From NCBI RefSeq assembly GCF_964204865.1, contig NC_135253.1, forward strand, positions 13,764,001 through 13,828,000: DNA of 64,000 nucleotides, written 5' to 3'. Shown piece by piece: positions 150 to 21,148 of this stretch. A model generated the notes under the pieces. That model was given only the letters and a program-made list of their open reading frames with translations. It was not told the DNA's origin and made no database searches. Source of the DNA: Styela clava (Eukaryota). Each line of letters starts with the position of its first letter. Positions within the stretch are counted from its first letter, which is position 1. The position numbers and the translations under genes were made by a program.

Positions 150-3100
150 GTTCTTCAGTGGGTGTCAAGGACCCATCACAACTCCATTAAAATCCTTTTT
201 TCTACTCACTAAATTCATTACTAACCTTCCGTCGCAAATGCTCTCCGTCGATAGGGGAAGAGAATTTCTGGATTTATCACATGTTAACTGTTGCTGCCAA
301 GCATCAATATTTTTTACTGCATAAAGAGAAGCTTGTCATAATTAAGTTATTTTGTTTAGCTTATTTTGTTATCAAGATGGAAACATTTTGAATTGAATCG
401 GAATATACTTAAAAATTAATTTTTCTCTTATAATTGTAGATAGATACCTGAATTTATGTCCCAAATCAGGAATTAATGAGCAACCAGCAAACCAATTACC
501 GTTTGATCAAGATGGTCGCACAACAATTAACGATATCTTGTAACTGCGAATTTGGGTACTCCCGTAGTATGTGAACCAAGATGGCGGACACCGGAAAGTA
601 GTATGTGTACCAGGTTAGGGTTAGGCCATCATTTTATTCCAATTTTCCTTATTTCAGTTCTATTACGAGTTCGGGGACTAGCCAAGTTTCCCGTAGTCTT
701 GTAGTATTTGAACCTGAAATTATGGAAATTATGGAAACCCTAACCTGGTACACATACTACGTCCCAGTGTTCGCCATCTTGGTTCGCATACAACGGGAGT
801 ACCCGAATTTGTACCTTAAAATAGGACTTATGGTTGTGTTAAGAATTCCCATTACTCGCTAGATTAACGATTAATGATTTTGACACTACTACCAAGTTCT
901 GATGCGGACTCACTTAACATCTGTGATTGGTTTACCTCTCTGCCGTGGCAAATCTCGTAAAGTTTCCATGCTCTTAAGATGATGTTTACTACCTGGAAGT
1001 AGTACTTATAATGAAAATTATAAATATCTCACTCCATCGAATTTTCTCGCAGACAGCTGGCTTTGTTCTCTTTTTGCACAGACATTCGTCAGAAAGATCT
1101 GGGCAATCTATGATTCCATCACACAGACTATTGAAGGCAATTACAGTTGGATGAGTCAAACAATGAAAACATTGCTTGTTGAGAAAACCTTGAAAACGGA
1201 ACAATAAGCTCAATAGCAGATTACTTATTTTATTGGCAAAAATATGGCAGTTGTATAAAATATTTGATAATAAGTAGTTACAAAAAAAATAAATAAAACG
1301 AATAAAATTGCCGAAATTTTATCATTGAGGTATCAGTCTAAATAGATTCATTATATATATCATTAATTAAAATGTTCGATGTGTAAAGGGCCAGCTAATT
1401 TTGAAGACAAACAAAAGCAAAAACATGCTAATTGGCGAATTGTATGCGGATAAATGATGTATTCGAACGGATTTATCGACTTTACTCTCCATCGGGAAAA
1501 ATATTAAAATTCCTAAACTATTAGGTGTGCGAGCTCGTTTATGTAGAATTTTCAATATTTTTCCGAGATTAAATGAATATATATATAAATTTAAAAATGC
1601 CTGTATTTCATCATACTTCGTTGTTTCGTAGAATTGTCATTGTCACAAAAACACTCGTCAGCCCCTGTAAAATATAACAATGTGTGCTACGCTAAATCAA
1701 TACACGAATATAAGAAATAAGGTCGAATGAGAATCCAGTTTTTGCCCAATAATGAGTTATTTGTGACCGAGTTTATTCACTATCAGATAACATGTTTTGT
1801 GTACAGTACTCAATTGTACCTTTTCACAATAACAAAATTACCAGCTGATGCTAACGATTGTTTAGCATTTACACCCAAAACACAAGTTATGGTATTGAAT
1901 CAATATAGTTTGTATTCAATGGATTTCCTTTCATTGTGTTGTTGACCCACTGCCGGGTTCGATAGAGAGAGAAATTTGTAACAGGCTTCTGGGCTAATCT
2001 AATGGTATCATAACGGTCATTTTATACATATTGTAACGGATTCCATTTGAGTGTACTTTCAAATTAGTCGGTAGCTTTCATCTATCATTACTTATCGATT
2101 TTAAGCGGTAAGTATGTTGATAGGTATTTGTCTGTCTGTTTGTTTGTTTCTCTGTCTGTTAGATGCAGGCGATATCTCACGAAAGCAAGATTGAATTTGC
2201 CCCAGATTTTGCATGTGCGTTCATCATATGTCCTACCAGAATCCTATTGATTTTGAATTAATTATGTCGTATAATTAGCGAGTTATTAATTAATTGGTGT
2301 CACTATGGAGTAAGAGCGCTGTTTTGGGGGATCCCTAACTTTCGATCGATAAGTCTTCGGTCTCTGACCGATATTCTAGTTTATTTATCAACGAAATTAA
2401 ATTCTGAAGAGAGAATGTTTCTAAGTAGATGTTTCTCTATCAATGTTGACTTGAATTGCTTCTAGTATGATGCCAACTACTTTTTACTGACACTTTTGTT
2501 CCAGCATAAACCTGTGTGAGCTTTTAGGGCTAGGGCGTCAGTGTTCATTCATTGCAAACAGTAATACTTCCACGTTTTTAACGGGCTCGCTATCTTCTCT
2601 ACGGGAGACGGGCGCATTTTATAATTCGGCACAATCCTAAACTAAAAAGGGGTGAGCCAATATCACAGAGTCTAGCAAACGTTCACGTTTCGACTTATAT
2701 TAAATAAATCAAACAGTAACTTACTGACGACAAAAAGTGTAAAACATTGCATCTTACTGCTGCTTTCGTTGAATTTATATTTGATTGTGATTTGTGTCTG
2801 CTCTACATTAGATCAAACAACAAACAAACAAAAAAAGCTTTGTAAAATGGTTACCCCCGACACAATGATCAATTCCGTCGCACATGTAGTGCTCGGGTAA
2901 AAGGCATCGCTTTGGATTACGAGTTGAGAACACGCCATCGCAAAATATTTCTTCTCCAATTCGTTGTGCCATGCTATCGCGCTCGTCAGAACCATCACTG
3001 GAAATATAATCAAATATAAAGATTTAAAATTTTTAGTACGGATATCAATAGGTAGATACGTTTTTATGGGCTTTGTAAAATCAAGATCACAAGCTTTCAC

Positions 3101-3931
3101 ATTTTACACACAAAGTAGACATATGTATCGTTTTGCTAAATTGATGTTGTTACTATTCTTCCTCTTGTTTTTGTGAAGAGTCCATTTTCTATTTCAATGA
3201 TTGTTGTTATACATAGAAGGCTATTACTTTTACTTGTTTTAAAAGTTTCTGTGATTTCTATGCAATTCGTTTTTCACTTCGAAGTTTTGTGTGATGACGT
3301 CATCGAAATAAAAAATTGCGCACCGTGTGGCGTTTCCAACATCAAGATATTTCAGCGATCTCGTGGTCAGCGAAGTCGGCAGTTTTTGATAAGGAAGATT
3401 ACCGGTACTGTGAACGATTTGATACTACTTCGTTTTGGCTTTCGTTTCCATATATTTGAGCATTACTCTCTTGTTATAAATCGCCATCATTTATAGAGAG
3501 AAGATGCACCACGTTGTTGGGCCAATTTTTCTGGGGAATCATCAGTGCATATACAGTATATATATATATTAATTTATATGATACTGGTTATTTCATAAGG
3601 CAAAATAGTAGTTCCAAATAGTATGCAATGTAACGCGATATATATATATAAATTGTTTCTAGAAAAATACGTTATGATTTTAAAAACACTGGTTAAAGAT
3701 GGAAGTTTTGAAAACTATTACGTTCAATTTTATTCAAATTTAGAAGATAATTACATAATAGCATATTTCGCCAGCAAAAGAAAATCATAAAATTGTGGTT
3801 CAAGACCATAAGCTCTATTTAATATATAACAAGAAAGGTATTTTCTATTTGGGGGAACTTACAGACAATCTGGGTGACCGTCGCAAAATCCCATAATGCA
3901 AGATTTTCCATCGAGGCATCTAAAACGATCT
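150..3931 (-). CDS. Multi-exon LDLa-repeat protein (partial), resembling the ectodomain of ascidian LDLa-repeat GPCRs
   Basis: GT-AG exons 3931-3863, 2997-2855, 1664-1617, ~1189-1034, ~992-914 and ~317-225 join in frame. They give FRCLDGKSCIMGFCDGHPDCL/DGSDE, CLLPEHYMCDGIDHCVG/GADECFC, CFHCLTHPTVIAFNSLCDGIIDCPDLSDECLC and ESICDG. 5' and 3' ends are unresolved. Confidence 0.75.
555..803. mobile_element. Merlin-type MITE, copy 1
   Basis: TIR GGTACTCCCGTAGTATG...CATACAACGGGAGTACC; 8-bp TSD CGAATTTG (547-554 / 804-811); internal GGTTAGGGTTAGG. Confidence 0.8.
2087..2380 (+). mobile_element. Helentron-associated (HINE/DINE-1-like) non-autonomous element
   Basis: Subterminal inverted repeats CTTATCGAT...ATCGATAAG, internal (TGTC)n, 3' hairpin CGGTCTCTGACCG, ends CTAGT; second copy at ~35059-35336. 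Confidence 0.7.
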
Positions 3932-5133: not shown

Positions 5134-8100
5134 CTAAGAAGAATCGTATGTATATATATATACTGAAAGCAATTACACATATGCAAAAATCCTCATCTAG
5201 ATAGGTTTGATTGCTAAACATCACTTCAGACAAACGTCTGTTATAATATTCTTCCGCAGTTTTCTGGGCAATGGTAAAGACTCAGAAAACACTATTTCAC
5301 ATTGCTATTGGCGTATCGTTTAGGAAAAAAAGCGGATTTTATTTCGAATGATTATTTCCATCACAATTTTCAAAGTCGGGAAAAGACAAGCGTGAAGAAA
5401 ACAAAATTAAATTTCTCAAATAGTATTAAAACATTACGAAGAAATTATTGTAACTGCATAACTGTAACCGAGAAGAATTATGAGTAACTATAGAATAATT
5501 GCGTTGAAAACTCTGAACTATATCGAAGAGAAAAAGACTAATATTTATGGATATGAGCGCCATATCTGAGATGATATCGAGAACATCATCATGATCATAG
5601 GAGGAGTACTTTGTCTGTTCCAATTTAATAAAAAAGCTTTCCAACGTACTATATTTGTTCCATATTTTTTGTGCGCACCCAATTTCTACTAAGATTAGAT
5701 TTCGTTTTTTTTTACTTTTTTAATGTACTAAATCGTACCAATTGATACTCTGAAGTAATAAATATATTAATGTAATGAAACCTATTCAAAACGCGCTCGT
5801 TTATCATTCAATAAATTTTAGTTTAATCGCAGTGGAAGTACATGACCAATCAAATAGAAGAGAATGGTTCAGTATTATCTGTTCACAATCCACAATAGCC
5901 GCAGGTAAATATTTTCGGTCAGTGTTTCCAAGCAACGAGAATTGCGGGCACAACCACTTATGCACACAAATTAGCCATGCATAATGTTGTCAAGAGATGA
6001 AAGTTTCAAACATCGGTCTATTATATTATATTAGCAAAACTAATGGGTCAAAACGCGATTTATCTTGTGCCAATTTGATCTTTCATCATCCAAATCGCTC
6101 ATGTATGAAGTAGTTCGTATAGCAAATTAAATCGCATTTGAAACAATGCCAACATGTAACTTTCCATTCGTTGCCTCCAAACATTTTATACTCTGCAAAC
6201 TAATTTGTTATATTGTTATTCAACAAGAAAAAAAAATCAAAATGAAAAAAATGGATATTAAGGAATCTGATATTAACGAAAAATGCTAATTGAGATTGAT
6301 TAATTTCAATATGCCCTTAAACTGTTTTGGTAAGTACTAAAAGGAACCAAAACAAATATTAACTGCGGGAGGAGAAATAATGAAACCCAAGGTATGAACG
6401 AAGTACAATTGGACGATGAGACTGTGAAACAAGCAGCAATGGTAGTTGATGGCACAAAGTGCGATTGCTGGAAATCCATTTTGCGTTTTAAATATTTTTA
6501 GCAACATATCTGCTGCAGAATTTATTTGGAGAAATCGCAAATTGTGCAAGCTGGATTACCTATAACTATAGATCATATTTTACTTTTTCAACTCAAAATT
6601 GACGACTGTTTTCAATTTGCCATGAGTGAAGACTCCACTTCCTTTGTACAAATTATTCGATTTGAACTTACCTCAGATAATAAAAAAAGCAAAAAATGTG
6701 ATACAAATAGGAACAATCATAAACCGTGTACTGCCGAAAAGGGTGCATGTTTTAACGAACATAGTTGCTTCATTTTAAGAACAATTTCTCATATTTACCT
6801 GTTTCCATGTCAGATAGGTGTAGACAGAAAAGTATTATTCGAATATTCCAATGTGCAATGGGACAGATATTTCACAATTTCACATATTCGTTTTCATCAA
6901 CGGTCGAATCAAATTGAATTGAATAAAAATTTTCATGAATCTATAGTTTTCAATTTTATATTGTATCGATTTGGACTAGTGAATATTTGTGAACTGAATA
7001 TTAAAATTTTATTGTATTTTTTTTTTGTTATTGTCCCGTATCAAGTCTATTTGAGCATAGAGAGACTAGTGTATTGTTTATAAAACGGTAAATGGGAATT
7101 TTTGTGTCTGTATGAAAAACGTTTCATGAGTTTGGATGGTATTGAAAATTTATATTTTGTTAACTGTGTATTATGGCTGCCCGTTTCTTCATATATATAC
7201 AGGGTGGTCGTCAGAAAAGCAGAAAATTTGGACGTCAGATGAGATCACAATAGGTTGAATTGGAACGATATCCCACAAGTTAACCTTCAAAACGTTACAC
7301 GAGGTTTGACTTCTAGGTTAAGACACTGCTCTGCTCTGCACGGACGAAATTTTGGTAGTCTATAAGTGTAATATGTCTTGAAAAACTTTGTATGAGTTAT
7401 TCTTTGTAAAAAATAAATAGATGTTTGACAAATTTTCTATTTTTCTGACGACCACCTATATGGATAGGGTTTTATTTTTTATCAATTCTAAAAAAAACAT
7501 TGTGTTTTAAAACAAGGGCTTGTTTTAAATTAAATTTTTTCTGTATTTTTTGTATTTTTTAATGAAATACCCATTGCATCGCCGCGAAACTACGTCAAAA
7601 CGTTGCATTCTGGCAGCTGCACACGCAGCCGGAATTATAATTTCAAAAATGTAAGTAAAATTTTTTATTTTGACTTTTACTTCTATTGCGTACATTTATC
7701 GCTACGTTTGTATCTCCACCAAAGTCATAAGATTTTACCCGGAAAGTTTAGCCGAGATATCAGAGAGACGTTTTGAGTAAGAAAAATCATGAAAATCAGC
7801 TCACGAGCCTACTACAAAAGCAATTATATCTAGTGCAGCCCTTCAGCAAAACAAGGGGGTTGCGATAACGAAGAATATGCTTATATCGATGGTAATATAC
7901 TGATATAAACGATAAGACCCTATAGCCTAGCCTATGGTAATTGTAAGGGTCCTCTGATGCAAAGACGTCACAACTAATCTGTTATGACGCCATAATATGG
8001 ATTTCGAGTTCATGTATTGACCTTTTTCTCATAAAATGAAGGCATTATCACGCTTAATACTGTTCGGGTAATTTATGCTTAGCATACTTTGTTGTTAAGG

Positions 8101-11100
8101 TTGAAGTGATAGAGTTTTTCAAGGTTATACAAACTCATTTATTCGATCGCATTTCAATTTTCGAAAGGTGGTTTCATCGCAGCATGGTCGTTCACGTGAT
8201 GGCTTGTCGGTTGCGTCTTACGGCGCCAACCTCTGAACTACAGCTTGAGAAGGTGTGCATGAGCCTCTATCGATATCTATGGCGTTTTGAACGATTTATT
8301 GCAAATAAGAAGCGCTTGGTAAATTTTTACATTCGTTTTTCTCCAACCTATTTAATTAATACAAAAAAATCAAATAGTGGGGCCATTTTGAACAAAACAG
8401 GCAAAAAAAAAATTGATTTAGAACAATTCTTTTTGAATAAATCCCTATATATATATGCCGGATTCGAGAGCACAAACTCATTCCTTTTTATAAGATAATA
8501 TGCAGCATTGAAAAATGGCAAACTTTACACGAACGGAAGAAAATAGAACATATTTAAAGATGAGAATGATCATATTGGTATAAACTGATAATTGTTGTAT
8601 CCATTTATTATATATATAGAGAGAGTATTCTAGTTCATGTGACATGTCAGACCGAATTCATAAACAAACACAGCCTTGTGGAGGTGAAAATGTGATCTCT
8701 AATAAATTGCAAAATAACTTTGTTTACGTTTAGTTGGAAGACAACAGCAGCCATTTTAACATAATAGCGATATTACATATTAAATAACTAATGAAACCGT
8801 GCAAACTTATTTTGTGATGCTGGTTTAAATTACATTTTGGCATGCAGAGCCAAAAGAGCCACGTTGCATTCCGCCGTAAAATGTTTTTTGTTCTTTTTTA
8901 TCCAGTGTCTAGCACTATAAATAAGAATACGTGACCAGCTGAACCGGGCACGTGGATTATCTATTTTACTCATTCCACTGTGGGAAGTTTCCCATTGTAT
9001 CGCTTTCGGTGAATAGTTTAAAAACAAATCAAGGACAATAGTCCAGAGATTAATGCCTGGCAAAAACAATGAAACTGCGAACTTGATGAAGCTCATCCCG
9101 CTCACGTTTATTGTAAATTGATGCATCGTTGTATCATGAAACAATGATTTGCTAGATAACGGTAGATGATGCAAAAACATCATTGAAATTCATTTCCCGG
9201 ATATCTGGGTCGGTTTAGAGAAAATAGTTTTGAGCTGGGCCATTTCATTTGAGTCGCTTGAAAAAAATTTGGGAACCACTGGTCTAAGTAGAATCGTATG
9301 TATACGCTGAAACCATTTACCTATATGCAAATACCCTTATTTCGATAGGTTTTATCGCCTAACTTCACATTCAGCCAAACGTCTGTTTTAATTCTGCCAC
9401 AGTTTTCTGGACAATAGTAAAGACTCAGGAAACGCTATTTCATATTGTTATCGGCGCATCGTTTAGGCTTAGGGTAACAAACACACCGTTTTTTTCCGGT
9501 TTCAAATTTATTTCGAATGATTATTTCCATCACAACTTTCCAAATCGGTAAAAGGCAAGCGTGAAGAAAGCAAAAGTAAATTTCTTAAATAGTATTAAAC
9601 ATTACGAAAAAATTGTATTGTAGCAAAACAGATTGATATTTGTGGACATGAGCACCATATCTGAGATTATGAGGAGTAATTTGTCGAGTTTCAATTCAAT
9701 AAAAAAGTTTCTAACCGACTATATTTATTCCACGTTGCTCATGCCGTTGGATATGTATGTGACCTGTATCGCGAGGTTTTTTTTTGATTAGCATTTATAA
9801 CTCATCGTCGCAGTCAATGACAAACGATCATATTTACCATATATATGTATATCGTGTATGCAAGTATTTGTTTCGATCTCAGTTAAAAACGCCAGTAAAA
9901 TAAAATAAAAAACTATCAAGTATAACTATACTCAAAGTAGAAGTTTTCGTATAGATTGGCAGGGGTGAGTAACATCAACTGAGTTTATATAAGTAGTCTT
10001 GATAACTAATTCTTTTTTTTTGGTCAAATTTTTTAATGTGCTTGAATAATAAATGGTAACAATTGATATTCTGAGACTTAATAAGAAATATATTAATGTA
10101 ATAAAACCCAATCAAAATAAGATGATCGTATATCATTCAAGAAATTTTAGTTTGGTTGAAGTGGGTAAAGGAATAATCGAATAGAAGTAAACGGTTCAGT
10201 ATTATTCGTTTACAATCCACAATAGCCTCAGCCCTAGTAAATACTTTTGGTCAATGTTTCCAAGCAACGAAAATTGCGGGCACAACCACTTATGCACATA
10301 AATTAGCCATGCATAATGATGTCAGGTGATGAAAGTTTCTAATATCGGCCTATTATATTATATTAGCAAAACTAATGGGTCAAAACGCGATTTATCTTGT
10401 CCCAATTTGACCTTTCATCATCCAAATCACTTATGTATGAAATAGTTCGTACAGCGAATTAAAATGCATTTGACACAATGCCAACATCCAACATGTAACA
10501 TTTCATTCCTTGCCTTCAAACATTAATATTCTACAAACTAATTTAATATATTGTTCTTCAACAAGAAAAAGATCAAAATCTGATATTGAGGAATCTGATA
10601 TTATAGCAAAATGCTAATCAAGATTGATAGATTTTAATATGATTCTAATATGCTTTGACAAGTACCGGAAGGAACCAAAACAGTTGGTATCTGCGAGAGA
10701 GAAGAAATATATGGATCCCAGAAAGCAGATACTCTCCCGTCTACCCAGGTCTATGTGATCGCGATCGTAACAATTATATAGAATGATATAAGATAACATA
10801 TAAGCACTAATTTTATTTATTTTTTCCAAATAATATGCATCATTGAAGAATGGCAAACTTTGCATATACCGGAGAAAATAGAACTTATTTAATGATGACA
10901 ATGATAATATTGTTATAAACTGATAATTGTTGCATATATTTATTATATTTATATAGAGTATTCTGGTTCATGTGATTTTGTTCTCAACATCTCAGACCGA
11001 ATTCATAATCGAACACAGCCTCGCCTGGAGTGAAGGTGGAAATGTGATCACTGATTTGCAAAATGTCTTTGTTCACGCATTTGTTTTACAAACATAATAG

Positions 11101-11695
11101 CGATATTACAAATAAAATAACTAAAAAACATATAAAATTATTTTGTGATGCTGGTTTAAATTCCATTTTGGTATGTAAAGCCAAAAGCGCCATGTTGCAT
11201 TCCGCCGTAAAATGTTTTTTTTTTGTCATTTTTTTTATCTATAGTGTAGCACTATGATTGCAAATACGTGACCTGCCGAACCAGACATATGGAATATCTA
11301 TTTTACTCATTCCACTGTGGTGGAAAGTTTTCCATTGTATCGCTTTTGATGAATAGTTTATAAATAAACCAAGAACAATAGTCCAGAGATTAATGTCTGG
11401 CAAAAACAATGAAACTCAGAACTTATGAAGCTCATCCTGCTCACGTTTGTTGTAAATTGATGCATCGTTGTGACTTCGAACAATGATTTTCCATATATCG
11501 GTGGATGATGCAAAAACATCATTGAAATTCATTTCCCAGATATCCGGGTTAATTAAGAGAAAATGGGTTTGAGCTAGGTCATTTCACATCCAACCATGTT
11601 AACGGTGGATGATGCAAAAAGTTCATTGAAATTCATTTCCCGGATACCTGCGTTGGTTAGGAGGAAACAGGTTTGAGCTAGGTCATTTTACATTC
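5134..11695. repeat. Old tandem segmental duplication (A..B-A'-B')
   Basis: ~5134-6360 aligns by eye with ~9284-10690, and ~8490-9250 with ~10830-11590; an extra ~90-bp local repeat lies at 11501-11695. Confidence 0.8.
7200..7458 (+). mobile_element. Internally deleted Tc1/mariner element
   Basis: TIR CAGGGTGGTCGTCAGAAAA...TTTTCTGACGACCACC flanked by TA; internal relic WNDIPQVNLQNVTRGLTSRLRHCSALHGRNF resembles a mariner-type transposase C-terminus. Confidence 0.7.
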
Positions 11696-13103
11696 ATTCA
11701 TGTTACGTTTTTATTGAAATGCCTATGGTATATATTGAAGTTTGTCAGTACTCTCAGTATGCTTCCCAGCTTTTCAAATTTGAGGGCTGGTACATATTTT
11801 GCTATTAGCGATAAAACTAAACTAAATAAAAATGTGTTATTTATTTGACTTACCACCTGTACCGGAAGATAAGCCATTTTTGTATATTCGAATACAATTC
11901 TATTCAAATTATTCACTAATTAGGGGTGCATTTAATTGGATGGGGAAATCACTGATCACGCTATATCCAATTCACAAAATGTAGTATCGCCTATAAAATT
12001 AATACTAAGAGCACCAAAATTTACATCTAGAAGCGACAATTTTGGGACAGTCAGAAATAAATTACCAGATACTGTAAAGCTGTAATAGGAGCCCGTACTC
12101 CCTAAAAGCTTTCTAGAATCCAAAGGCGTCATATAAAACGAATATTACATGTATCCATCCATAATAAATCTGTGAATAGGTGATGTGGGAATGCTTAATT
12201 TACACGAATTGCCATGACTCTGGCTCACAAATCTCAATTTTGTTTTTATTCATTTTCCATATCAATTATATATTAAAAAACACTTACAATACCTATATAT
12301 ATATAGTAATTTCCATAAAAATAGTCCTCGCTGCCTATCGCAGATCTTTGTGAGTAAGTCGCCTTTTTTCGACGTTTTATTACAGTTACTCTTTCCATTT
12401 TGGGAATATGGGATAAAGCTTCACCAGTTGAGCAACAAGGCGTTCGTAACAACGCGTTAATTATCTTGTTATTGAGAAATTTGATCTCAGTTTCAATGTG
12501 ATGCACGAAAGTTATTATTCTCTATTCTATTCATCAGAACACTTCCCTGAGCGTGATGTCATGAACAACGCTTTTAATGGGAAGTAACGAGGATTTCCGT
12601 CAGACCATATTTTATGATGAGATAACCCAATGGGAGATATTGTGCGCAACACAAAATTTTTTGAACTAGTGTTTTCATTGCCAGGCAATAATATATGTAT
12701 GTATTCATCATATTGTTCAGATTGCATATTACAAAGCACTTCGAGTTGACGAAATTTCCGTCTCGAATTTAGACTACGAAGTTTCTGAAAACACGACTTC
12801 TGGTCCGACCTCAATATAATGTTTACCATGACCACGCATTACAATGTAGAAGTCATCTTGATTTAAAGATTTTAGGTGCTTACAGAGTCTTGTTCCAAAA
12901 TAGTATGCAAAAACTAAAGAACAATGTTTCTTGGATAAATGATAGATTTTTCTGATTTAATTTCTGGTTTTAGCTTTTATGAAAATCTAACAATGCCAAT
13001 TTATGTCCAGCTGCAAGACCAAAGCTACCCAAAATATTTGTTGAACCGAAACCGGTCATGCCGTTCAGAAAGTGATAATTAGGTATACTATAATGGAGGT
13101 TTC

Positions 13104-13136
13104 TTCCGGAATTCTGAAAAACTTAGCTTTAAAAGG
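13104..13136 (+). promoter_or_regulatory. Putative core promoter of peptide gene 1
   Basis: Palindromic TTCCGGAA (ETS core) at 13104-13111 followed by TATA-like TTTAAAAG at 13128; same arrangement at the paralog. Confidence 0.4.
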
Positions 13137-13209
13137 AGCAGTTTGAAATCTGGAAGCACATTTGTTGGCCTTGGTTTAATAGTCGATATATATCAAAAGC
13201 AGCCAAAAT

Positions 13210-14382
13210 ATGAAATCACTTGTACTTATTTTGGGGTTGGTGTTGCTCGCGGTCAGTTTTGGCGACGGTTACTATCACCGTAGACGTTACCACCACTCCT
13301 ACCATGCCCATCATCATTACGCGCAGTATAACCGATTCTCCCGATCCCTTACGTCTCTTTATCGCATCGGAAGAGGATTGCGAGTCACTGGGAACAGACT
13401 TATTGGTCTTTATCGTTTGTACAGGTATTGAATTAGTGATTAATATCTTGACCTCACAAATATATTTTATTCGTGAAACACTATTTATAAAATTTTGATG
13501 TTTCTGCATCAAAATTTTCAAACTACGCACAGATAAAAGTTGCGCAAGTTTTAGGGCAAATCTAACAAAAAATCAATTAGCAAAATTTTGAAAAATGACA
13601 AAATTATTATTTGTTTTGTCAGTTTGAGACCACAATTCAGTTTTTGAATAGTATTAAATATTTATATTCAATAATAAAGATAAACCAAAACATTTCTTCA
13701 AAATTATATCGTAAATCGTTACGCCTTCAATCTCTATTCTAAATTATTATGGACAAACTTGATTTATATAAGGTTCCATTTTTGATCCCCAAATATATCG
13801 ACAAAGCTATATATTTTTGCAATAGAATACTAATAACATCCACGTTTTTTAGACGCATGCTGATTAACATGCATCATTACGGGTACCATGGTGACGAAGA
13901 CGACTTGTCTTTACTTGATGAAGATACTAGTTCGTTTGAGGTGAGACCGAATTGAAAATAATATAATAAAGTTAATCGAAGCCTTTTGCATTTCACGAGT
14001 AAAGTTCAAAAACTCGTTTTGAATGGAAAATAATAATTATCAAATTCCGTTTCCGTTACAGAAAGATGAAATGAACATGCCAGAACAACTAGCTGATAAC
14101 GCCGGTAAGTTATATTATAAATCAAATGTACATAATAATTTTATTACAACATTTATTTCTATTCCAACGGGGGCCAATGACTGGCCCTTATGATTATAAT
14201 ACACAATTTGTAAGTCAGCATACATCTTTGGCATATTTTTAGCAATCAGGCGCAACTAGATAAACTTGACTAATAAGACTTCAACTATTACGATTAATGT
14301 GATAACTGTAATGTATGATTTTATCTTTATAGAAGACAAGGACGATGGTCAAGCAGAAGATGATATATCCATGACGGAATAG
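13210..14382 (+). CDS. Secreted His/Tyr/Arg-rich cationic peptide precursor with acidic C-terminal propiece (131 aa); candidate antimicrobial peptide
   Basis: Exons 13210-13424, 13853-13940, 14062-14104, 14333-14382 (GT-AG, 396 nt). Protein: MKSLVLILGLVLLAVSFGDG|YYHRRRYHHSYHAHHHYAQYNRFSRSLTSLYRIGRGLRVTGNRLIGLYRLYRRMLINMHHYGYH|G|DEDDLSLLDEDTSSFEKDEMNMPEQLADNAEDKDDGQAEDDISMTE. AATAAA near 14470. Confidence 0.85.
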
Positions 14383-14790
14383 ATCAATTGTTGAAGATAC
14401 TGAAAGTCGAATCTTCTCGTTTTAACATTGCAATACATTTTATGCATGAAAAATATATATGGTATATATAATAAAAATATTTGGACAACTTCATATATGA
14501 GTCAGTGTTTGGTGTTACTTCATTTCGAGTCTCGATTTAGGTCGATTCTCTGAACTGGGTCTTGAATTCAATTTTATCAGCCTGTAGAGCGTAGGTAATG
14601 AGAAATCTTCTATATATAATAAAGATTATCGAAGCAAAGTCAATCATAATGCGCACACAGCCGTGGCCTAAACACCAGTATGGTTGTATAATATTCAACA
14701 GGAAGTTTGCTTCCAATTGCACGCTATCGGGTGTTGGTCGAGCGCGCAAAATCACCTTCTCGTTAAATTTTCTAGCTTTGACCTGTAGAG

Positions 14791-15985
14791 TAGGGTTGCC
14801 ATACCGTCCGGAAAATTTAGGGTTAAATTTTGCGTCCGGAAAGAATTTAAAAAAATGCTCTAATGTCCGGAATTTTACTGCATTTGCAATCGTACCGTGC
14901 ACACTGCTAATACTACGAGGTTGTGTGGAATTATGATGTAACAGAGCGTTCCTTATCAATGATGTTCACCACTTGGAACTTTCTGATTATTATTCGCTGA
15001 CTGTTTTACTCGTTTCGTTGTGCAGCTGCAAGTGTATTTGATAGCAGCTAGTTCCTTGTTAAATTAGCTAAATACAGAAGTTTTATACCACGAAGTTTTA
15101 CTTGTGGATTTTCTATTTGAATAGGAAGCAAGTCAGGAATTCGGGATCGAAAGTGCTAGTCCCTGGAGCTTTTTGGTTCAGTTAGTCTGGTGGTAAATTA
15201 CTTTGTTTTTTGAAGTACGCATTTTTATTTGGGTTGTATTTATTGTTAATAAAAAAAGATATTATTTTAAATGGCTAATTTTAAACGAAAGTACACATTC
15301 ACTAACGAGATGCGAGAAAAACATCCATGTTTTAGAAAAAGCAGGAATGATTATGGGGCAGAATGCTTGGTTTGCGAATCAGGAACCTATATATATATAT
15401 CTGTCGTGCACAATGGTAATGGTGATTTAAACACACATCTGCAATCAGAAAAACATCGCAAAGCAGTAAGAGTGGCTGTTGCATCAACGAAAATGACAAA
15501 TTATTTTGTTACAGCAGGAAGTAAATGCGAAGATGAAATCACTGCCGCAGAAGGCACGCTTGCATTTCACGCTGTTAATCATCATCATAGCTTTTTGTCC
15601 ATGGACTGTACATCTGATTTACTTGAAAATATTTTCCCTGATTCTAATGTAGCGAAGAAGTTTAGTAGTGACCGCACAAAGACAGAAAAAGTTGTTACTA
15701 GCGTACTTGCGCAATATTCTATTGATGCTGTTCTGAAAAGTTTTGAAGAAAACGATATCGCGTACTTTGGCGTTGCAACAGATGGCAGCAATCACAATGA
15801 ACTGAAATTACTATAATTATTCAATGTTTTGACTGGAGGAAAGGTGGCTTGCAATCAAAATTGATGAGTTTACAAACAAGGCAAACGAGACTGCCGACAC
15901 AATTTCCACTTATGTAAGAGACACCTTAGAAAAAATGATGCTTTTGAAAAAATGTGTGGCATTTACAGGAGACAACTGTAAATGC
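14791..15985 (+). mobile_element. hAT (Blackjack-like) transposon 5' fragment with disrupted transposase
   Basis: Left end TAGGGTTGCCA with repeated GTCCGGAA. ORF 15271-15816 has Zn finger C-x2-C...H-x5-H and YFGVATDGSNH (first catalytic D), then frameshifted CVAFTGDNC. Confidence 0.8.
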
Positions 15986-16163
15986 CTTATTGAAGAGAAT
16001 TAGATCTCCAGAAAAATATGCATGGTCAAAATAGTAAATTTGCAGTGACTTGACTTACAAGCGTGTATGTAATTTGTTTTAAGCTGTAATCACTGGGCTT
16101 ACTTTTTGGCACAACCTAATTCTCAATATTATTTTCCACTCTGAACTTGAGATTCATTTAGAG

Positions 16164-16961
16164 CAGTGGTCGGCAAACTTTATGTACTTGCGGGCCAAAT
16201 ATACACATTTCCGGTAGCGCGCGGGCCGCAATAATTCCACTTTCGAACAATCATTACATTAAACTCCCAATTATGGCGCATTCGCACCTTCTATTGCTGT
16301 GTTAAAAGTCCGCCACAATGAGATGTGTATGTGGCGTTTTTTCGAAATATTATCTGACAATACATTGTTTTTATTTACCTATTATCAATGTGACGGATGA
16401 TGTTTTTATGGCAACTTGCCCGCGGTACGTCGTCCAAATGACTAGTATAAAATTTATTGTAAGTGTAATGCATTTTAGATTAAGCTGCTGACAGCAATAT
16501 GAGCTTCTGAACGTGCAGAATACACGTTTTGCACTGTCGCACAAATGAGCTGTGGCTTAGTCTCGGGTATCGGGGTCGAATTTTCGATGAGACGTTTCGT
16601 AACGAGTAGAACATTAAATACCTTAAATATTTGCGATGCTGACCGGACATATGAAGCTGGTTTTGGAATGCGCGAGAAAGAAAAATATATTTGCGTCCAA
16701 GCACTTTGGAATCGTCGCGAACCCTCCGTTTCCAAGACAATTTTAATATCAAAATTAACCCGAACGGCATAGAACTGACGCTACTCATTTCAAAACAAGC
16801 GTCGTACAGCAGCACTTGTTATCACATAAATCTGTGTGTGGACAATAATAAATTAAGGATCAATTTTTGTTATATGTATTAAATGTCGGGTCTATCGAGG
16901 GCCGCAATAAATTAGCTCGCCGGCCGCATTCGGCCCGCGGGCCGCAGTTTGCCGACCCCTG
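16164..16961. mobile_element. hAT (Charlie-like) MITE
   Basis: TIR CAGTGGTCGGCAAAC / GTTTGCCGACCCCTG; perfect 8-bp TSD ATTTAGAG. Confidence 0.9.
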
Positions 16962-17071
16962 ATTTAGAGCTATATTTAGAGAGTGCCCGCCTGGCGCGTT
17001 GGAATGAGTATCGTACAGCGTTTGCAGCCTTAGAATTTCGGTAGCGCATATATATGGTCTCGTGAAAATAT

Positions 17072-17162
17072 GGAGCTCCGGAAGTATGTGCACCAAGATG
17101 GCGCACAACCTGAACATAGTATAGGTTGTGCGCCATCTTGGTGCACATACCTCGGGAGCGCC
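17072..17162. mobile_element. Minimal (91 bp) hairpin Merlin-type MITE
   Basis: Near-perfect palindrome GGAGCTCCGGAAGTATGTGCACCAAGATGGCGCACAACC...; TSD GAAAATA(T/C). Confidence 0.75.
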
Positions 17163-18630
17163 GAAAATACTCATGCACTGCCCGGAATTTTGCTTCTTCA
17201 AATATGGTAACCCTATTGTAGAGTCAAATATTGTGCGAAATAGGTGAACAAATGTCACTGAAAAACGTTTTTCATTTTTGTAGACTTTGCGTAATATCAA
17301 GTCTTTGATCATTTTTGTTAAGTTTCGATCAGTGTCGCAAAAAAGTGGTAGCAAGGAGGAATCCAAAACCACTGCAGTATTCTGAGTCCTATGCTGGCCA
17401 AATCCAGGCCATTTCGACAAAACTTCCATCGCCATCCGCTATCGACTCCTAATAGCCTATATATTAATAGCTGATAAAACCATTTGACATCAAAATTGTG
17501 TTATACATTGTGTTAGCCGGCAATAGCTGTTGAAGCCAAATGAGTTGTCCTTTCCGTTGTAGTCAAATATAAAATATCTTACTATTTGCTATAATTAATT
17601 CATTTATGAATCGGTCTGATTTCATAAACACAATTTTTTGAAGCTAATAAAGGAATCGTGAGCTTAAGCTGAAATATTTGAACGTTTCGATGTTGATATA
17701 TCTTAGTTCTATCCTAATTATATATATAAAAGAACTTGTCAGAACCCTCGTCACAAAGAAGCAATATTTTTGTCCACTGTGCTCGTGTATAGGCCAACGC
17801 TATTTTTCTACAAAAGAGATGCTGCAATGCTTCAACCATTCAAACGATACAGTATGGATACACTGTTATTTATAACCTCCTGAAAGATGCTGAAAGCTAT
17901 TTGACTGATTGCTTTATATCAGAATTAGGACATACTTTACTGCTCTACGTGAATAATTTGTTTTGGCTTGAGCGATTATTTTTGAACTCGAGTCTCTTTT
18001 AGCCGTTGAGACGTAAGCGCGTTTACAGCTTTGCTCTAAAAAACTAATTTCCAGAAACTATTTGCTCCAGTCAAGTACACTAACCAACACATGTGTTTAT
18101 CAAAATCTTCCATTTTTTTTTTATCCAACTCCAACTTAGTATATAATGAAATATTAAGTACAAATGTAATGTGAGCATGAAATCGGACGAGCAACCTTGA
18201 TCAAAAGATTTTATGTGATTTATCAGTAATTTCTATGAATGACAATGTGAAGAAGGTCTGTCATTATGTGGAAAAATAAGCACATATACTGTATTTTCAT
18301 TTACTTGGCACTTAGTACAACTACATTGAAAAAAAAATCGTTTTTTTCAATTTAGCACAGAGACACTGTAATGTTATTGAAGGGTGTCCGACATCACATA
18401 ATATTGGAGAATCATATTACTTCGATCGTGTCATGGATTCAGCAACAGCATTTTTTTCAATTTTATCGACATTGCCACGCAGACAAAGTTAGCTTACTAT
18501 CAATCCAGCATGCCCAATTCATACATGTATGATGGCAATATGATCTGTAGGATATAGTTGTTCCGCGATAAAACGAATATAATTTTACAACACTAAATTT
18601 TGTGAAAAATTTTTTTTAAGAGGAAATGAT

Positions 18631-18656
18631 TTCCGGAAACTATTTTTTATAAAAAG
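18631..18656 (+). promoter_or_regulatory. Putative core promoter of peptide gene 2
   Basis: TTCCGGAA at 18631-18638 and TATAAAA at 18648, about 50 bp upstream of the ATG. Confidence 0.45.
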
Positions 18657-18701
18657 AAAACACATGAAGTTCTTTATACAGTTCCTGATGTGAGAGTCAA
18701 C

Positions 18702-20449
18702 ATGAATCTGAAAACATCTATCTTTATTTTGTTCATCACATTCCTTGTTTGTGACATCGGAGGTGCTATTCGTGGCTCAAAGAGACGACGAAGTTACGTT
18801 GCCGCCAGAGCCCTACTAAAACTACGTCGTATTGGAATAAATCTGCGTGCAACTGGTAGTAAGATCCTTCGTCTTTACTCTCTGTACAGGTATGGCTTAC
18901 ATTAAAATATTTGTCCGCGGCTGTTGAGTGTATTACGCGAGTTATAAAAAGTAAGATTCCATGCTAGTATAATTTATCAGAATGTACAGGTATGGCCTAA
19001 ATTAAAATCTTTTTCCACGGCTGTTAATTAAGTGTATTACACAAGCTTGTCTATGGGAAACGTACCATGGGATGAGACGGGACAGCACACATTTGTATTT
19101 CCCATGGGAGACGTGGGACACGAAAACCGTATGATTTTCGAGAAAATGCTGATAAAACAATTTGTCATGGACTTCGTGTCCATATATTTGAGCATAGCTC
19201 TCTTGTTAGTTATAAAGAGCAAAATATATTCAGCATTGACAGCATTAACAATATACTTCGTGAAGGGGATGATGGACACATGTATAATAGTAGTAATTTA
19301 GTATATATACAATATATATAATAGTAGTAATATAGTAATTTAGTAGACGCTAAACCTGAATTTAGTAATTTTTATTGAATTTTATACCAATTGGGATCCC
19401 ATGGGATGGGGTGGGACAGGCATAATTGCTATGGGATGGGAATGAGACAAGAAAATATGTCCTGTGGACAAGCCTGGTATTACATGAGTAAAAAACTCAA
19501 GACTTTACGCAAGTATAATTTATCAGAATGATTTGAAGATTCACAAAGGGTTCAAAATTTCTCGGAATACTGTGAATCTAAAAAACAAACTCTTCAGACA
19601 AAAGCAAGCAGACCGGTCACATAAAGTCGTGGTCCATCGGGGATATTGGCTTTAAAATAAAACACCATTATAACTGACATGCATTTATTCACAGCAATCT
19701 CTTCAACTTTGCTCGAAGCTGAGTCAGCAGCTCCCCATCTATACTGAACCCCTCATACCGGCAGTTATATTGAAGGGAACAAGCGTTCATTTATACACAA
19801 TTTATGAAAACCCAACAAATGATTTAAATATTTCTGTTCCAGGCGTTTTGTTCTACGGACAAGAAAAAGGGGTGACACCGATGATATTGACGATATCAAC
19901 GATGTCAACCCATCAGAAGTAAGTATACCCTAACTAGTATAAGCAGTTGTATTGAAAAGTATAGCTTGAACCCGGATTCTACTTATAACATACACATTTT
20001 TAATGCTATAAAGACTAAGCCTTTGGTGAATATCACAACTCGCGATCGCGCTACAGCATACTAATATAAAAACGATTATCTTTAGGATGAATCCGAATCT
20101 CTCGAGAAGTTCGAAGAAATGCCGGGTATGAAGTTTTCTTATTATCTTATCATCTAGAATTCTAGAACGACTGTGAAATGAACAATTTTGAACGCTTCAG
20201 TGGGTAGAAATGTATAAATTGAATATGGGTAGGGTATATCACCGGGTATAGCAGTACTTACAACATAGCCTATAGATTCTATGTATCACGCTGGAGATTG
20301 TCAAACACCATTTACAAAAAGAGCTCTGGAACGATATAATTAAAATTAATTAGTACTATATAAAAAAAAAAACTTTATCGGCTTGACAGATATTATAAAC
20401 AAGGTCTCACATACTATTTTTGATTTCAAATATGCTAGAAGAGGAATGA
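18702..20449 (+). CDS. Secreted Arg/Lys-rich cationic peptide precursor with acidic propiece (~104 aa); paralog of the 13210 gene
   Basis: Exons 18702-18889, 19843-19918, 20086-20125, 20439-20449, with the same intron phases 2,0,1. Protein: MNLKTSIFILFITFLVCDIGG|AIRGSKRRRSYVAARALLKLRRIGINLRATGSKILRLYSLYRRFVLRTRKR|G|DTDDIDDINDVNPSEDESESLEKFEEMPEEE. Last exon less certain. Confidence 0.8.
19042..19476. mobile_element. hAT-type MITE in intron 1 of peptide gene 2
   Basis: TIR CAAGCTTGTCTATGGGA / TCCTGTGGACAAGCCTG; 8-bp TSD GTATTACA; subterminal ATGGG repeats. Confidence 0.85.
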
Positions 20450-21148
20450 AGTTACAAATCCTGAAGAGAACCAGAGTTATAAGAAGAAGAAAATATTTAA
20501 TTGGAAAACTCTGCATATTTATTATTTAACTCTGATTCTCAAAATATAATTGCAATGAAGTCAAAATCGATTTAAATATCAATATAAATTTTGATGGATA
20601 GTAAGATGTCAGTTTTAGCCTAATCTTGATATGACTTTCACGTTTGCAGACAATAGAATTATTGAAAAGGCAAGATTCCGTAAAATTGTTAGATATATGT
20701 GATTGCAGAGATTTAGCAGCTGAATAAAAACTAAGTTTGTCAATGTTTTTAGGACTTTGCAACCATCTTAGATTTTTGTATTCCATTCCATTCCAACCAT
20801 TCCAACAAAAACGATTAGATTTGTGCGTCCATTACACAAAAAACTGTTAAAAGGTTTTAATCGAAATTCCCTAACAGAACATGAATACGATTAATACTGC
20901 TAGCGAAATGAGATTTTAAAACGAGTGATTTCTGCCAATTCATCAAACCACGACCACAAAGGATGTTTCTATGATTAGGTCACGAGATGTCGGATTAGTT
21001 TGAAGTGACTAATAGTAATTGTGGATTTTATCGATATTTCAACACAAACCCAACAAATAGATTGTCCAACCATACATGCATAGACAGTTACTTGCGATGC
21101 CATATATTTATACGGTTTATAGCTAACTGGGGCAATAGCACATTTTAC

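What the first reader, a model, noticed from the sequence alone, without database searches (positions are those of the whole stretch)
13210..20449. Tandem pair of unrecognised cationic-peptide/acidic-propiece precursor genes: candidate new ascidian host-defence peptide family
Seen: two 4-exon genes 5.5 kb apart with identical intron phases (2,0,1) and an alignable amphipathic core (LTSLYRIGRGLRVTGNRLIGLYRLYRRML vs LLKLRRIGINLRATGSKILRLYSLYRRFV; shared L.RIG..LR.TG.....LY.LYRR). Both have a signal peptide, an N-terminal RRR, a Cys-free cationic segment with no acidic residues (12 Arg; 18 Arg+Lys) and an acidic tail (20/46 and 16/31 D+E). Known: signal-cationic-anionic is the layout of Styela clavanin/styelin and Ciona MAM/PAP precursors. 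Inference: the predicted mature peptides (~64 and ~51 aa) are much longer than clavanins/styelins and I see no sequence resemblance to them, so this looks like a separate family.
Basis: partly seen in the sequence, partly recalled or inferred. Interest (0 to 1): 0.9.

Follow-up and report, generated by a model that had tools for sequence, protein, structure and literature searches.

The report
Two-gene cationic secreted peptide family

Summary
Two 4-exon genes on the + strand (13210-14382 and 18702-20449) have GT-AG introns in phases 2, 0, 1. They share a 29-residue Arg-rich core and have the stated charge counts.

RNA-like contigs from three studies show all three junctions of gene 1 and the first junction of gene 2. 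My models equal RefSeq proteins of Styela clava, LOC144422026 (131 aa) and LOC144422027 (104 aa), both named "uncharacterized".

The two are true paralogs (BLASTP E 3e-9) and old ones: synonymous sites are saturated, while the core is the best-kept part.

Nothing else resembles them:
- no Pfam, PDB or Atlas match;
- a HMMER profile search of 1.84 billion proteins returned only these two;
- whole-genome searches found no third copy;
- they are not clavanins.

The layout is that of ascidian linear cationic helical antimicrobial-peptide precursors: signal, Cys-free cationic helix, a Gly-Asp junction as in the clavanin gene, then an acidic tail. No activity or tissue evidence exists. I read them as a new sequence family of this known precursor type (confidence about 0.5).

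The scan did not find this family before on other DNA. Two other peptide clusters noted elsewhere in this genome were not compared.

The parts
13104..13111 (+). Palindrome TTCCGGAA (ETS-core-like), 17 nt upstream of the TATA-like box of gene 1
   Evidence: It is one of only two occurrences in the 64-kb window. The other sits at the same place before gene 2 (positions). A regulatory role is inferred, not shown.
13128..13136 (+). TATA-like box TTTAAAAGG of gene 1, 74-82 nt before the ATG
   Evidence: Read from the sequence. Spliced contigs of X9 and X10 begin at 13193 and 13190.
13210..13424 (+). Gene 1 (LOC144422026) exon 1. It encodes the signal peptide (about residues 1-19), the His/Tyr-rich stretch with RRR, and the conserved Arg-rich core from residue 45 (DNA 13342 onward). 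It ends inside an Arg codon (phase 2).
   Evidence: Translation; junction seen in 4 runs; equals P0003; AlphaFold2 helices 2-21 and 40-81.
13853..13940 (+). Gene 1 exon 2. It holds the end of the core (RR), a second His/Tyr module, the Gly85|Asp86 junction and the start of the acidic tail. The following intron is phase 0.
   Evidence: A genome-wide search with this exon finds only itself.
14062..14104 (+). Gene 1 exon 3 (acidic tail); the following intron is phase 1
14333..14382 (+). Gene 1 exon 4 (end of the acidic tail and the TAG stop). The 3' UTR runs at least to 14453, and AATAAA lies at 14470.
   Evidence: X5 record 15 ends at 14453 followed by adaptor sequence.
18631..18638 (+). Palindrome TTCCGGAA, 10 nt upstream of the TATA box of gene 2
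18648..18656 (+). TATA box TATAAAAAG of gene 2, 46-54 nt before the ATG
18702..18889 (+). Gene 2 (LOC144422027) exon 1. It encodes the signal peptide (about residues 1-22), KRRR, and the conserved core from residue 36 (DNA 18807 onward). It ends inside an Arg codon (phase 2).
   Evidence: Contigs X5 record 21 and the X9 loose end at 18890 continue into exon 2. Equals P0001.
19843..19918 (+). Gene 2 exon 2. It holds the end of the core, a basic stretch, the Gly73|Asp74 junction and the start of the acidic tail.
   Evidence: its first 26 letters are seen joined to exon 1 (table 7); RefSeq model.
20086..20125 (+). Gene 2 exon 3 (acidic tail)
   Evidence: RefSeq model identical. Not covered by the reads laid.
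20439..20449 (+). Gene 2 exon 4 (last three Glu and the TGA stop)
   Evidence: RefSeq isoform X1 (P0002, 107 aa) has three more residues here.

Best explanation
These are two old paralogs of a lineage-restricted gene family of Styela clava. Each encodes a small secreted prepropeptide.

Proposed course (inferred):
1. The signal peptide is removed.
2. The acidic C-terminal tail keeps the strongly basic part neutral during storage (net +12 against -18 in gene 1, +18 against -15 in gene 2).
3. Cleavage before Asp at a conserved Gly-Asp-x-Asp-Asp junction releases a long linear helical peptide of about 50-65 residues. It is Cys-free and Arg-rich, and probably C-terminally amidated.
4. The released peptide binds and disturbs anionic microbial membranes.

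Shown: the genes, their splicing and expression, paralogy, composition, the predicted helix, and the parallel junction in the clavanin gene.

Inferred: the processing sites, amidation, storage in blood cells and antimicrobial action.

Gene 1 additionally carries two His/Tyr-rich modules. These could add pH or metal dependence, or be oxidised to DOPA.
For: Real and expressed:
-.

Layout:
- Hydrophobic N-terminus, predicted helical.
- Acid-free, Cys-free cationic segment, then a tail that is 43-52% Asp+Glu.

Helix:
- AlphaFold2 gives gene 1 one helix over residues 40-81, with block-mean pLDDT 78-88 over residues 51-80.
- Gene 2 has helices 27-43 and 48-72, at low confidence.

Amphipathicity:
- 18-residue windows of the core have HeliQuest-type H 0.23-0.46, moment 0.42-0.55 and charge +4 to +6.
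- This is at or above the values printed for the validated Ciona peptides Ci-MAM-A (0.428 / 0.380 / +6) and Ci-PAP-A (0.449 / 0.350 / +4) in PMC7387483, Table 3.
- The conserved Ile, Leu, Tyr, Gly and Thr lie on one face and the Arg residues on the other.

Processing precedent in the same animal:
- The clavanin gene reads ...HVF-G|DDQQ... followed by an acidic tail.
- Clavanins are C-terminally amidated (PMC10608444 table).
- Styelins and clavanins are cut N-terminal of D and DD (PMC7387483).
- Our genes read G|DEDD and G|DTDD.

In Ciona, five of five candidates chosen by such criteria were antimicrobial, one of them Arg-rich with charge +11.

Spliced contigs have high word depth (542-3495) against 9-12 for intron-bearing contigs.
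Against: - There is no evidence on tissue, induction, peptide or activity. The run descriptions are coded, so blood-cell expression is unknown.
- The presumed mature core is the most conserved part: pN 0.31, against 0.60 and 0.68 in the flanking cationic parts and 0.45 in the signal, with synonymous sites saturated. Many defence-peptide families show the reverse pattern. This fits a specific binding partner at least as well.
- As one ideal helix, the 29-residue core exceeds shuffles only marginally (fraction of shuffles reaching it: 0.05 and 0.10).
- The peptides would be two to three times longer than clavanins and styelins.
- The precursors (104 and 131 aa) exceed the 50-100 aa screen of PMC7387483.
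- Signal cleavage sites were judged by eye only.
Confidence: 0.5

Rival explanations
1. These are precursors of regulatory peptides (hormone, neuropeptide or cytokine-like). Basic sites (KRRR/RRR after the signal, the conserved RR at the exon 1/2 junction) would be cut by prohormone convertases. The conserved core would be a ligand for a receptor, and the Gly would give an amide.
For: - The core is under clear purifying selection while its flanks drift.
- The RR and the RRR/KRRR sites are conserved.
- A Gly precedes the tail.
- By eye, the C-terminal part of the gene 2 cationic segment recalls the C-terminus of NPY-type peptides, and the first intron splits an Arg codon in phase 2. This rests on my own knowledge of NPY genes and is a lead only.
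Against: - No Pfam hit at E <= 10, the pancreatic-hormone family included.
- The Gly is followed by Asp, not by the Lys/Arg of the classical amidation signal. The split Arg is not next to a terminal Tyr/Phe-Gly.
- Word depths of hundreds to thousands in whole-sample RNA contigs are high for a neuropeptide, though depth is a poor measure.
- The strong charge pairing of core and tail is typical of stored toxic peptides.
Confidence: 0.15
2. These are structural or adhesive granule proteins. Tyr/His-rich cationic polypeptides would be oxidised to DOPA and cross-linked (tunic repair, clotting, extracellular traps), with the acidic tail serving for packing.
For: - Gene 1 has 11 Tyr and 10 His in 66 residues.
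- Both genes keep the Tyr residues of LY.LY.
- Styelins are DOPA-bearing (PMC9966394; PMC10608444).
- The same genome has clavanin-headed genes with GYYPPTY-type repeats.
Against: - Gene 2 lacks the His/Tyr modules (3 Tyr, 0 His).
- What is conserved is the Arg-rich helix, not the Tyr/His parts.
- There are no repeats and no Pro/Gly-rich structural motifs.
Confidence: 0.12
3. The family has some other function not covered above, for example a chaperone or packing factor for other granule contents, or a fertilisation or settlement factor. The precursor-like layout would then be coincidental.
For: An orphan family with no homologs and no expression context.
Against: The combination of signal, acid-free cationic helix, G|D junction and acidic tail is specific. 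It is matched in the same species by a proven peptide precursor.
Confidence: 0.2

Closest known systems
Clavanins / clavaspirin of Styela clava (Pfam PF05452)
   Same: Same species. Secreted precursor with a Cys-free cationic helical peptide, then Gly followed by Asp-Asp and an acidic C-terminal tail. His-rich, like gene 1.
   Different: - No sequence match.
- The clavanin peptide is 23 aa and Phe-rich, with a short acidic piece before it. Ours is about 50-65 aa, Arg-rich, with one or two Phe.
- The clavanin gene has its signal on a separate exon and the rest on one exon, on contig C1. Ours has 4 coding exons with signal and core together, on C4.
Styelins of S. clava and botryllin of Botryllus schlosseri
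   Same: Styelid blood-cell peptides that are linear, helical and cationic, C-amidated, Tyr-bearing and DOPA-modified, made as prepropeptides with a C-terminal extension (PMC9966394; PMC10608444). They are cut N-terminal of Asp (PMC7387483).
   Different: - Styelins are 31-32 aa, Lys- and Phe-rich, with a conserved KHK motif.
- Gene 1 has no Lys at all in its cationic part, and neither gene has KHK.
- No direct alignment was run, because no styelin sequence was available by reference.
Ciona Ci-MAM / Ci-PAP and the other Ciona linear cationic helical peptide precursors (PMC7387483)
   Same: The order signal / cationic amphipathic helix / anionic region. Acidic residues rather than basic motifs at the boundary. 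Arg-rich members exist. Hydrophobicity, moment and charge fall in the same range.
   Different: - The Ciona precursors are 50-100 aa with active pieces of 14-29 aa.
- No Ciona protein appeared in the profile search of 1.84 billion proteins.
- By eye, the acidic tails share Glu/Met-rich patches (E-M...Q-[LM]-A-D). This is untested and may be only composition.
Anionic propieces of other cationic defence peptides (general principle; own knowledge)
   Same: The charge of the tail balances that of the core.
   Different: No sequence or fold relation. This is only an analogy of mechanism.

Membership tests
Clavanin (PF05452) | Match to the family profile | tested here: not met
   No hit at E <= 10 for either protein. 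The same profile finds the true clavanin genes of this genome at 118-120 bits. BLASTP against a clavanin precursor gives E 0.63 and 7.9.
Clavanin (PF05452) | 23-residue His/Phe-rich mature peptide | tested here: not met
   The cationic segments are 66 and 52 aa. Gene 1 is His-rich, but the cationic segments hold only one (gene 1) or two... strictly one Phe each by my reading's strings; gene 2 has no His.
Clavanin (PF05452) | Gene structure: signal exon plus one exon for all the rest | tested here: not met
   Clavanin profile positions 1-17 and 23-80 lie on two exons about 1 kb apart. Ours have four coding exons, with the signal and core on exon 1.
Clavanin (PF05452) | Gly followed by Asp-rich tail at the C-terminal processing site | tested here: met
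   Clavanin has F-G|DDQQ. Ours have H-G|DEDD and R-G|DTDD. Actual cleavage and amidation cannot be tested here.
Styelin / botryllin | 31-37 aa Lys/Phe-rich peptide with a conserved KHK motif | tested here: not met
   No KHK in either protein, and 0 Lys in the gene 1 cationic segment. The motif is taken from PMC9966394.
Styelin / botryllin | Sequence similarity to styelin precursors | not tested
   No styelin sequence was available by reference. Indirectly, the profile search of 1.84 billion proteins gave no hit beyond the two genes.
Ascidian linear cationic alpha-helical peptide precursor (class as screened in PMC7387483) | Signal peptide | tested here: inconclusive
   A hydrophobic N-terminal run of 12 or more residues, predicted helical, with small residues at -1/-3 of plausible cleavage sites by eye. 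No SignalP was available.
Ascidian linear cationic alpha-helical peptide precursor (class as screened in PMC7387483) | Cys-free segment with 18-residue windows of H 0-0.6, moment 0.1-1.0, charge +3 to +10, predicted helical | tested here: met
   35 and 41 windows pass. The best have moment 0.42-0.55.
Ascidian linear cationic alpha-helical peptide precursor (class as screened in PMC7387483) | Anionic C-terminal region | tested here: met
   42 and 19 windows meet the anionic criteria. Asp+Glu are 20/46 and 16/31.
Ascidian linear cationic alpha-helical peptide precursor (class as screened in PMC7387483) | Precursor of 50-100 residues | tested here: not met
   104 and 131 residues. This is a screening limit of that paper, not a biological definition.
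Ascidian linear cationic alpha-helical peptide precursor (class as screened in PMC7387483) | Antimicrobial activity and blood-cell expression | not testable with these tools
   This needs synthesis and assays. Run descriptions are coded, so tissue is unknown.
Ci-MAM / Ci-PAP | Sequence similarity, conserved family signal peptide | not tested
   These sequences were seen only as text in PMC7387483 and have no reference, so the comparison was left out. No Ciona protein appeared.
NPY / pancreatic-hormone family (PF00159) | Profile match; C-terminal Arg-Tyr/Phe followed by Gly-Lys-Arg | tested here: not met
   No Pfam hit. The Gly is followed by Asp, and the split Arg codon is not at a terminal RY/RF.

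The most novel reading that the evidence does not exclude
This would be a third family of Styela clava blood-cell defence peptides, unrelated in sequence to the other two. The peptides would be unusually long (about 50-65 aa) and almost Arg-only helices. Their conserved face carries small residues spaced a heptad apart (I-G ... T-G), which would let them self-associate in membranes. They would be released and amidated at a Gly|Asp junction. Paralog 1 would be armed with His/Tyr modules that make it pH-, metal- or DOPA-dependent. The family would be old (duplicates saturated at silent sites) and therefore present across styelid ascidians.
Probability: 0.3. Interest if true: 0.6.

Novelty: new variant of a known kind. 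Interest (0 to 1): 0.42.

Why it matters
Styela clava gave the clavanins and styelins, which are models for salt- and pH-tolerant peptide antibiotics. A further family with no sequence relatives would widen the known repertoire of chordate-lineage innate effectors. Its peptides would be much longer, arginine-based and carry a conserved core.

It would also give a test case for two questions:
- How is the Gly|Asp processing step of ascidian peptides carried out?
- Why would a defence peptide keep its mature core conserved?

If instead the core is a ligand, it would be an unrecognised tunicate signalling peptide. Either way, two RefSeq "uncharacterized" genes gain a testable hypothesis.

Tried and rejected
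Searches that found nothing further:
- Whole-genome protein and profile searches with exon 1 of each gene and with exon 2 of gene 1 found only the two genes. There was one chance hit at E 0.36.
It was shortened and rerun.
- Atlas look-alikes: no usable hit.
- PDB sequence search with the pair profile: none at E <= 10.
- Peptide fragments searched in 8.4 million papers: none.

Readings considered and rejected:
- Clavanin membership.
- NPY-like reading (plus the sequence itself).
- "Cla-H" of a 2026 paper is a His-tagged derivative of a parental S. clava peptide "Cla" and is irrelevant here.
- A shared promoter element with clavanin genes: the exact TTCCGGAA is absent from the clavanin loci, and only GGAT cores are seen by eye.
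- The organism B contig (X10) as evidence of an ortholog: it differs by 1 letter in 298 and has depth 3, against 1790 in the same study's organism A run. It is probably the same species or carry-over.
- A conserved tail motif S.EK.E.MPE from MAFFT. I do not rely on it because it does not respect the exon boundaries, and an exon-by-exon alignment gives GD.DD[IL] instead.

Weak result:
- Whole-core amphipathicity against shuffles is only marginal.

- The spliced models were searched exon by exon, by reference. The joined proteins were never typed into a search. They came back from the database as P0001 and P0003 and were used by id. Joining in scripts served only for translation and composition.
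- Comparison with styelin and with Ci-MAM/PAP was left out, because those sequences have no reference.


Full report
**What is there**

Reading 12800-20800 and translating candidate exons gives two + strand genes.
- Gene 1: exons 13210-13424, 13853-13940, 14062-14104, 14333-14382; 131 aa.
- Gene 2: exons 18702-18889, 19843-19918, 20086-20125, 20439-20449; 104 aa.

All six introns are GT..AG, and the phases are 2, 0, 1 in both genes. The first intron splits the same Arg codon, directly after the shared LY.LY. The ATGs are 5,492 nt apart.

**Expression and splicing**

One search for sequencing runs gave RNA-like runs of the same organism from three studies. These held 0.3-0.67 of the sampled words of gene 1. 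It also gave DNA-like runs that held all of them.

I laid four runs on 13100-19099.
- All three gene-1 introns are skipped exactly in X1, X5 and X9. The first is also skipped in X10.
- The spliced contigs have word depths of 542 to 3495. Intron-bearing contigs have depths of 9-12.
- For gene 2, a 512-nt contig of X5 ends its match at 18890. A contig of X9 continues at 18890 with the first 26 letters of exon 2.
- Junctions 2 and 3 of gene 2 lay outside the 6-kb limit and were not seen.
- The runs are contigs and "RNA" is the tool's guess. However, exact GT-AG skips at high depth next to rare unspliced forms are what RNA gives.

**Identity**

Exon 1 of gene 2, searched by reference, returned a 104-aa NCBI protein of Styela clava. 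This is XP_077967871.1, "uncharacterized protein LOC144422027 isoform X2", and it is identical to my model. A profile that included exon 1 of gene 1 returned LOC144422026, 131 aa, also identical to my model. So the window is S. clava, and RefSeq already predicts both genes without naming them.

The joined proteins were never typed into a search. They were used by the ids the database returned.

**Paralogy and age**

- The two proteins align at E 3e-9.
- Identity is concentrated in a 29-residue core (residues 45-73 and 36-64), with the pattern R.L..L.RIG..LR.TG.....LY.LYRR.
- Nei-Gojobori counts show silent sites at saturation (pS 0.71-0.74).
- Replacement differences are 0.31 in the core, 0.45 in the signal, and 0.60 and 0.68 in the cationic parts on either side of the core.
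- So the duplication is old, and the core has been held by purifying selection.

**How restricted is the family**

- Whole-genome searches (377 Mb) by protein, profile and back-translated motif find no third member.
- A full HMMER profile search of 1.84 billion representative proteins returns only these two.
- The word-indexed search of 5.8 billion clusters likewise returns only these two.
- Pfam gives nothing but a signal-peptide-level hit at E 0.15.
- PDB sequences give nothing, the Atlas nothing, and papers nothing.
- These libraries seem to hold few tunicate transcript proteins. Absence from other ascidians is therefore not shown, and the age of the duplication predicts orthologs in related species.

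**Shape**

- AlphaFold2 without an alignment gives gene 1 a signal helix (2-21) and one long helix over 40-81. Block-mean pLDDT is 78-88 over residues 51-80. The His/Tyr stretch and the tail are disordered.
- Gene 2 gets helices 27-43 and 48-72, at low confidence.
- On the HeliQuest scale the core windows have H 0.23-0.46, moment 0.42-0.55 and charge +4 to +6.
- The conserved Ile/Leu/Tyr and the small Gly/Thr lie on one face, and the Arg residues lie on the other.
- Taken as a single ideal 29-residue helix, the moment beats shuffles only marginally (0.05 and 0.10). The amphipathicity is real but not extreme.

**Comparison with the known peptides of the same animal**

The Pfam clavanin profile finds the clavanin genes on contig C1. 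There the signal lies on its own exon. A second exon encodes a short acidic piece, the 23-aa peptide, a Gly, and then an Asp-Asp-led tail.

Clavanins are C-terminally amidated (PMC10608444). PMC7387483 states three relevant points:
- Styelins and clavanins are cleaved N-terminal of D and DD.
- Ciona precursors run signal / cationic amphipathic helix / anionic region, with acidic rather than basic residues at the boundary.
- Five of five tested Ciona candidates were antimicrobial.

Our genes read Gly|Asp-Glu-Asp-Asp and Gly|Asp-Thr-Asp-Asp at the charge switch. They therefore work like this class on paper.

They are not members of the clavanin family. The profile, BLASTP, peptide length and exon structure all fail. 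Styelin and Ci-MAM/PAP could not be aligned because I had no reference for them. By inspection, the KHK motif of styelins is absent.

**Promoters**

The palindrome TTCCGGAA occurs exactly twice in 64 kb (expected 0.8). The two sites are 13104 and 18631, each 10-17 nt upstream of the TATA-like box of one of the two genes. Otherwise the upstream regions barely align. This looks like a retained regulatory element with an ETS-type GGAA core. Its function is inferred. The clavanin loci do not have it.

**Reading**

The best-supported account is a new sequence family of the ascidian "signal / cationic helix / acidic propiece" precursor type. It would release a long Arg-rich helical peptide, probably amidated.

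I put this at about 0.5, for two reasons:
- Nothing shows the tissue, the processing or the activity.
- The conserved mature core suits a ligand as well as it suits a defence peptide.

The rivals are a regulatory peptide precursor (0.15), a Tyr/His cross-linking granule or tunic protein (0.12), and some other function (0.2).

**Earlier notes of the scan**

Two notes lie on this same stretch, one on Gly-Asp amidation and one on the His/Tyr modules. They agree with what I found. I could back the first with the clavanin gene and two papers, and the second only with composition counts. Two other peptide clusters noted elsewhere in this genome were not compared.

**Limits**

- Run descriptions were coded.
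- No tunicate genomes other than this one could be searched.

Noticed in passing
L010 (G000:C1:22046398-22049451, gene on - strand); L009 (G000:C10:21156598-21159651, - strand): Both loci carry a clavanin-like first exon (MKTTILILL.LGLGIK, PF05452 positions 1-18). About 1 kb downstream there is an exon of tandem 14-aa repeats. L010 has GYYPPTYDQQDNGK, period 42 nt, 10 copies at 97% matches, running off the locus. L009 has DQQDNHDSAKTWG[KN]Y repeats. YPPTY recalls mussel adhesive decapeptides (own knowledge), and DQQDNGK recalls the clavanin acidic tail. These may be Tyr/Pro-rich repeat proteins that share the clavanin 5' end.
   Followed up: partly
window 37296-39911 (- strand): An uninterrupted 871-aa ORF encodes a complete M1 aminopeptidase: Peptidase_M1_N, Peptidase_M1 (E 2e-91) and ERAP1_C. 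It has no introns in an intron-rich genome, so it may be a retrogene.
   Followed up: no
window 17072-17162: A 40-nt inverted repeat, 93% complementary with an 11-nt loop, lies inside a stretch (16900-17300) with summed contig depth of 6,000-17,000 and many loose ends in all RNA-like runs. This is a high-copy, transcribed hairpin-bearing repeat.
   Followed up: partly
window 16159-16966: An element of about 800 nt is bounded by 21-nt inverted ends. Some contigs skip most of it (joints 16197>16841 and 16188>16919), as for a MITE-like insertion that is missing in other copies or haplotypes.
   Followed up: no
window 15271-15816 (+ strand): A 181-aa ORF between the two genes has a Cys/His pattern (C..C ... 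H...H) near its start and no Pfam hit. It is followed by out-of-frame continuation. This is possibly a decayed transposase. It is covered by low-depth contigs.
   Followed up: no
window 16388-18890: In run X1 a single 2,471-nt contig (depth 145) runs from the intergenic repeats straight through the gene 2 promoter into exon 1 and stops at the donor site (record 7). This would be upstream read-through or an alternative far-upstream start for gene 2.
   Followed up: no
window 20424-20449: RefSeq isoform X1 of gene 2 (P0002, 107 aa) inserts Asp-Met-Leu before the final Glu residues. In this window the exon start needed for it is preceded by AA, not AG. It may reflect an allele of the RefSeq individual or a weak model.
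   Followed up: no
window 48499-48864 (- strand): An ORF fragment shows a weak sugar-transporter (MFS) match, E 5e-4, below the Pfam cut-off. It is probably an exon of a neighbouring transporter gene.
   Followed up: no
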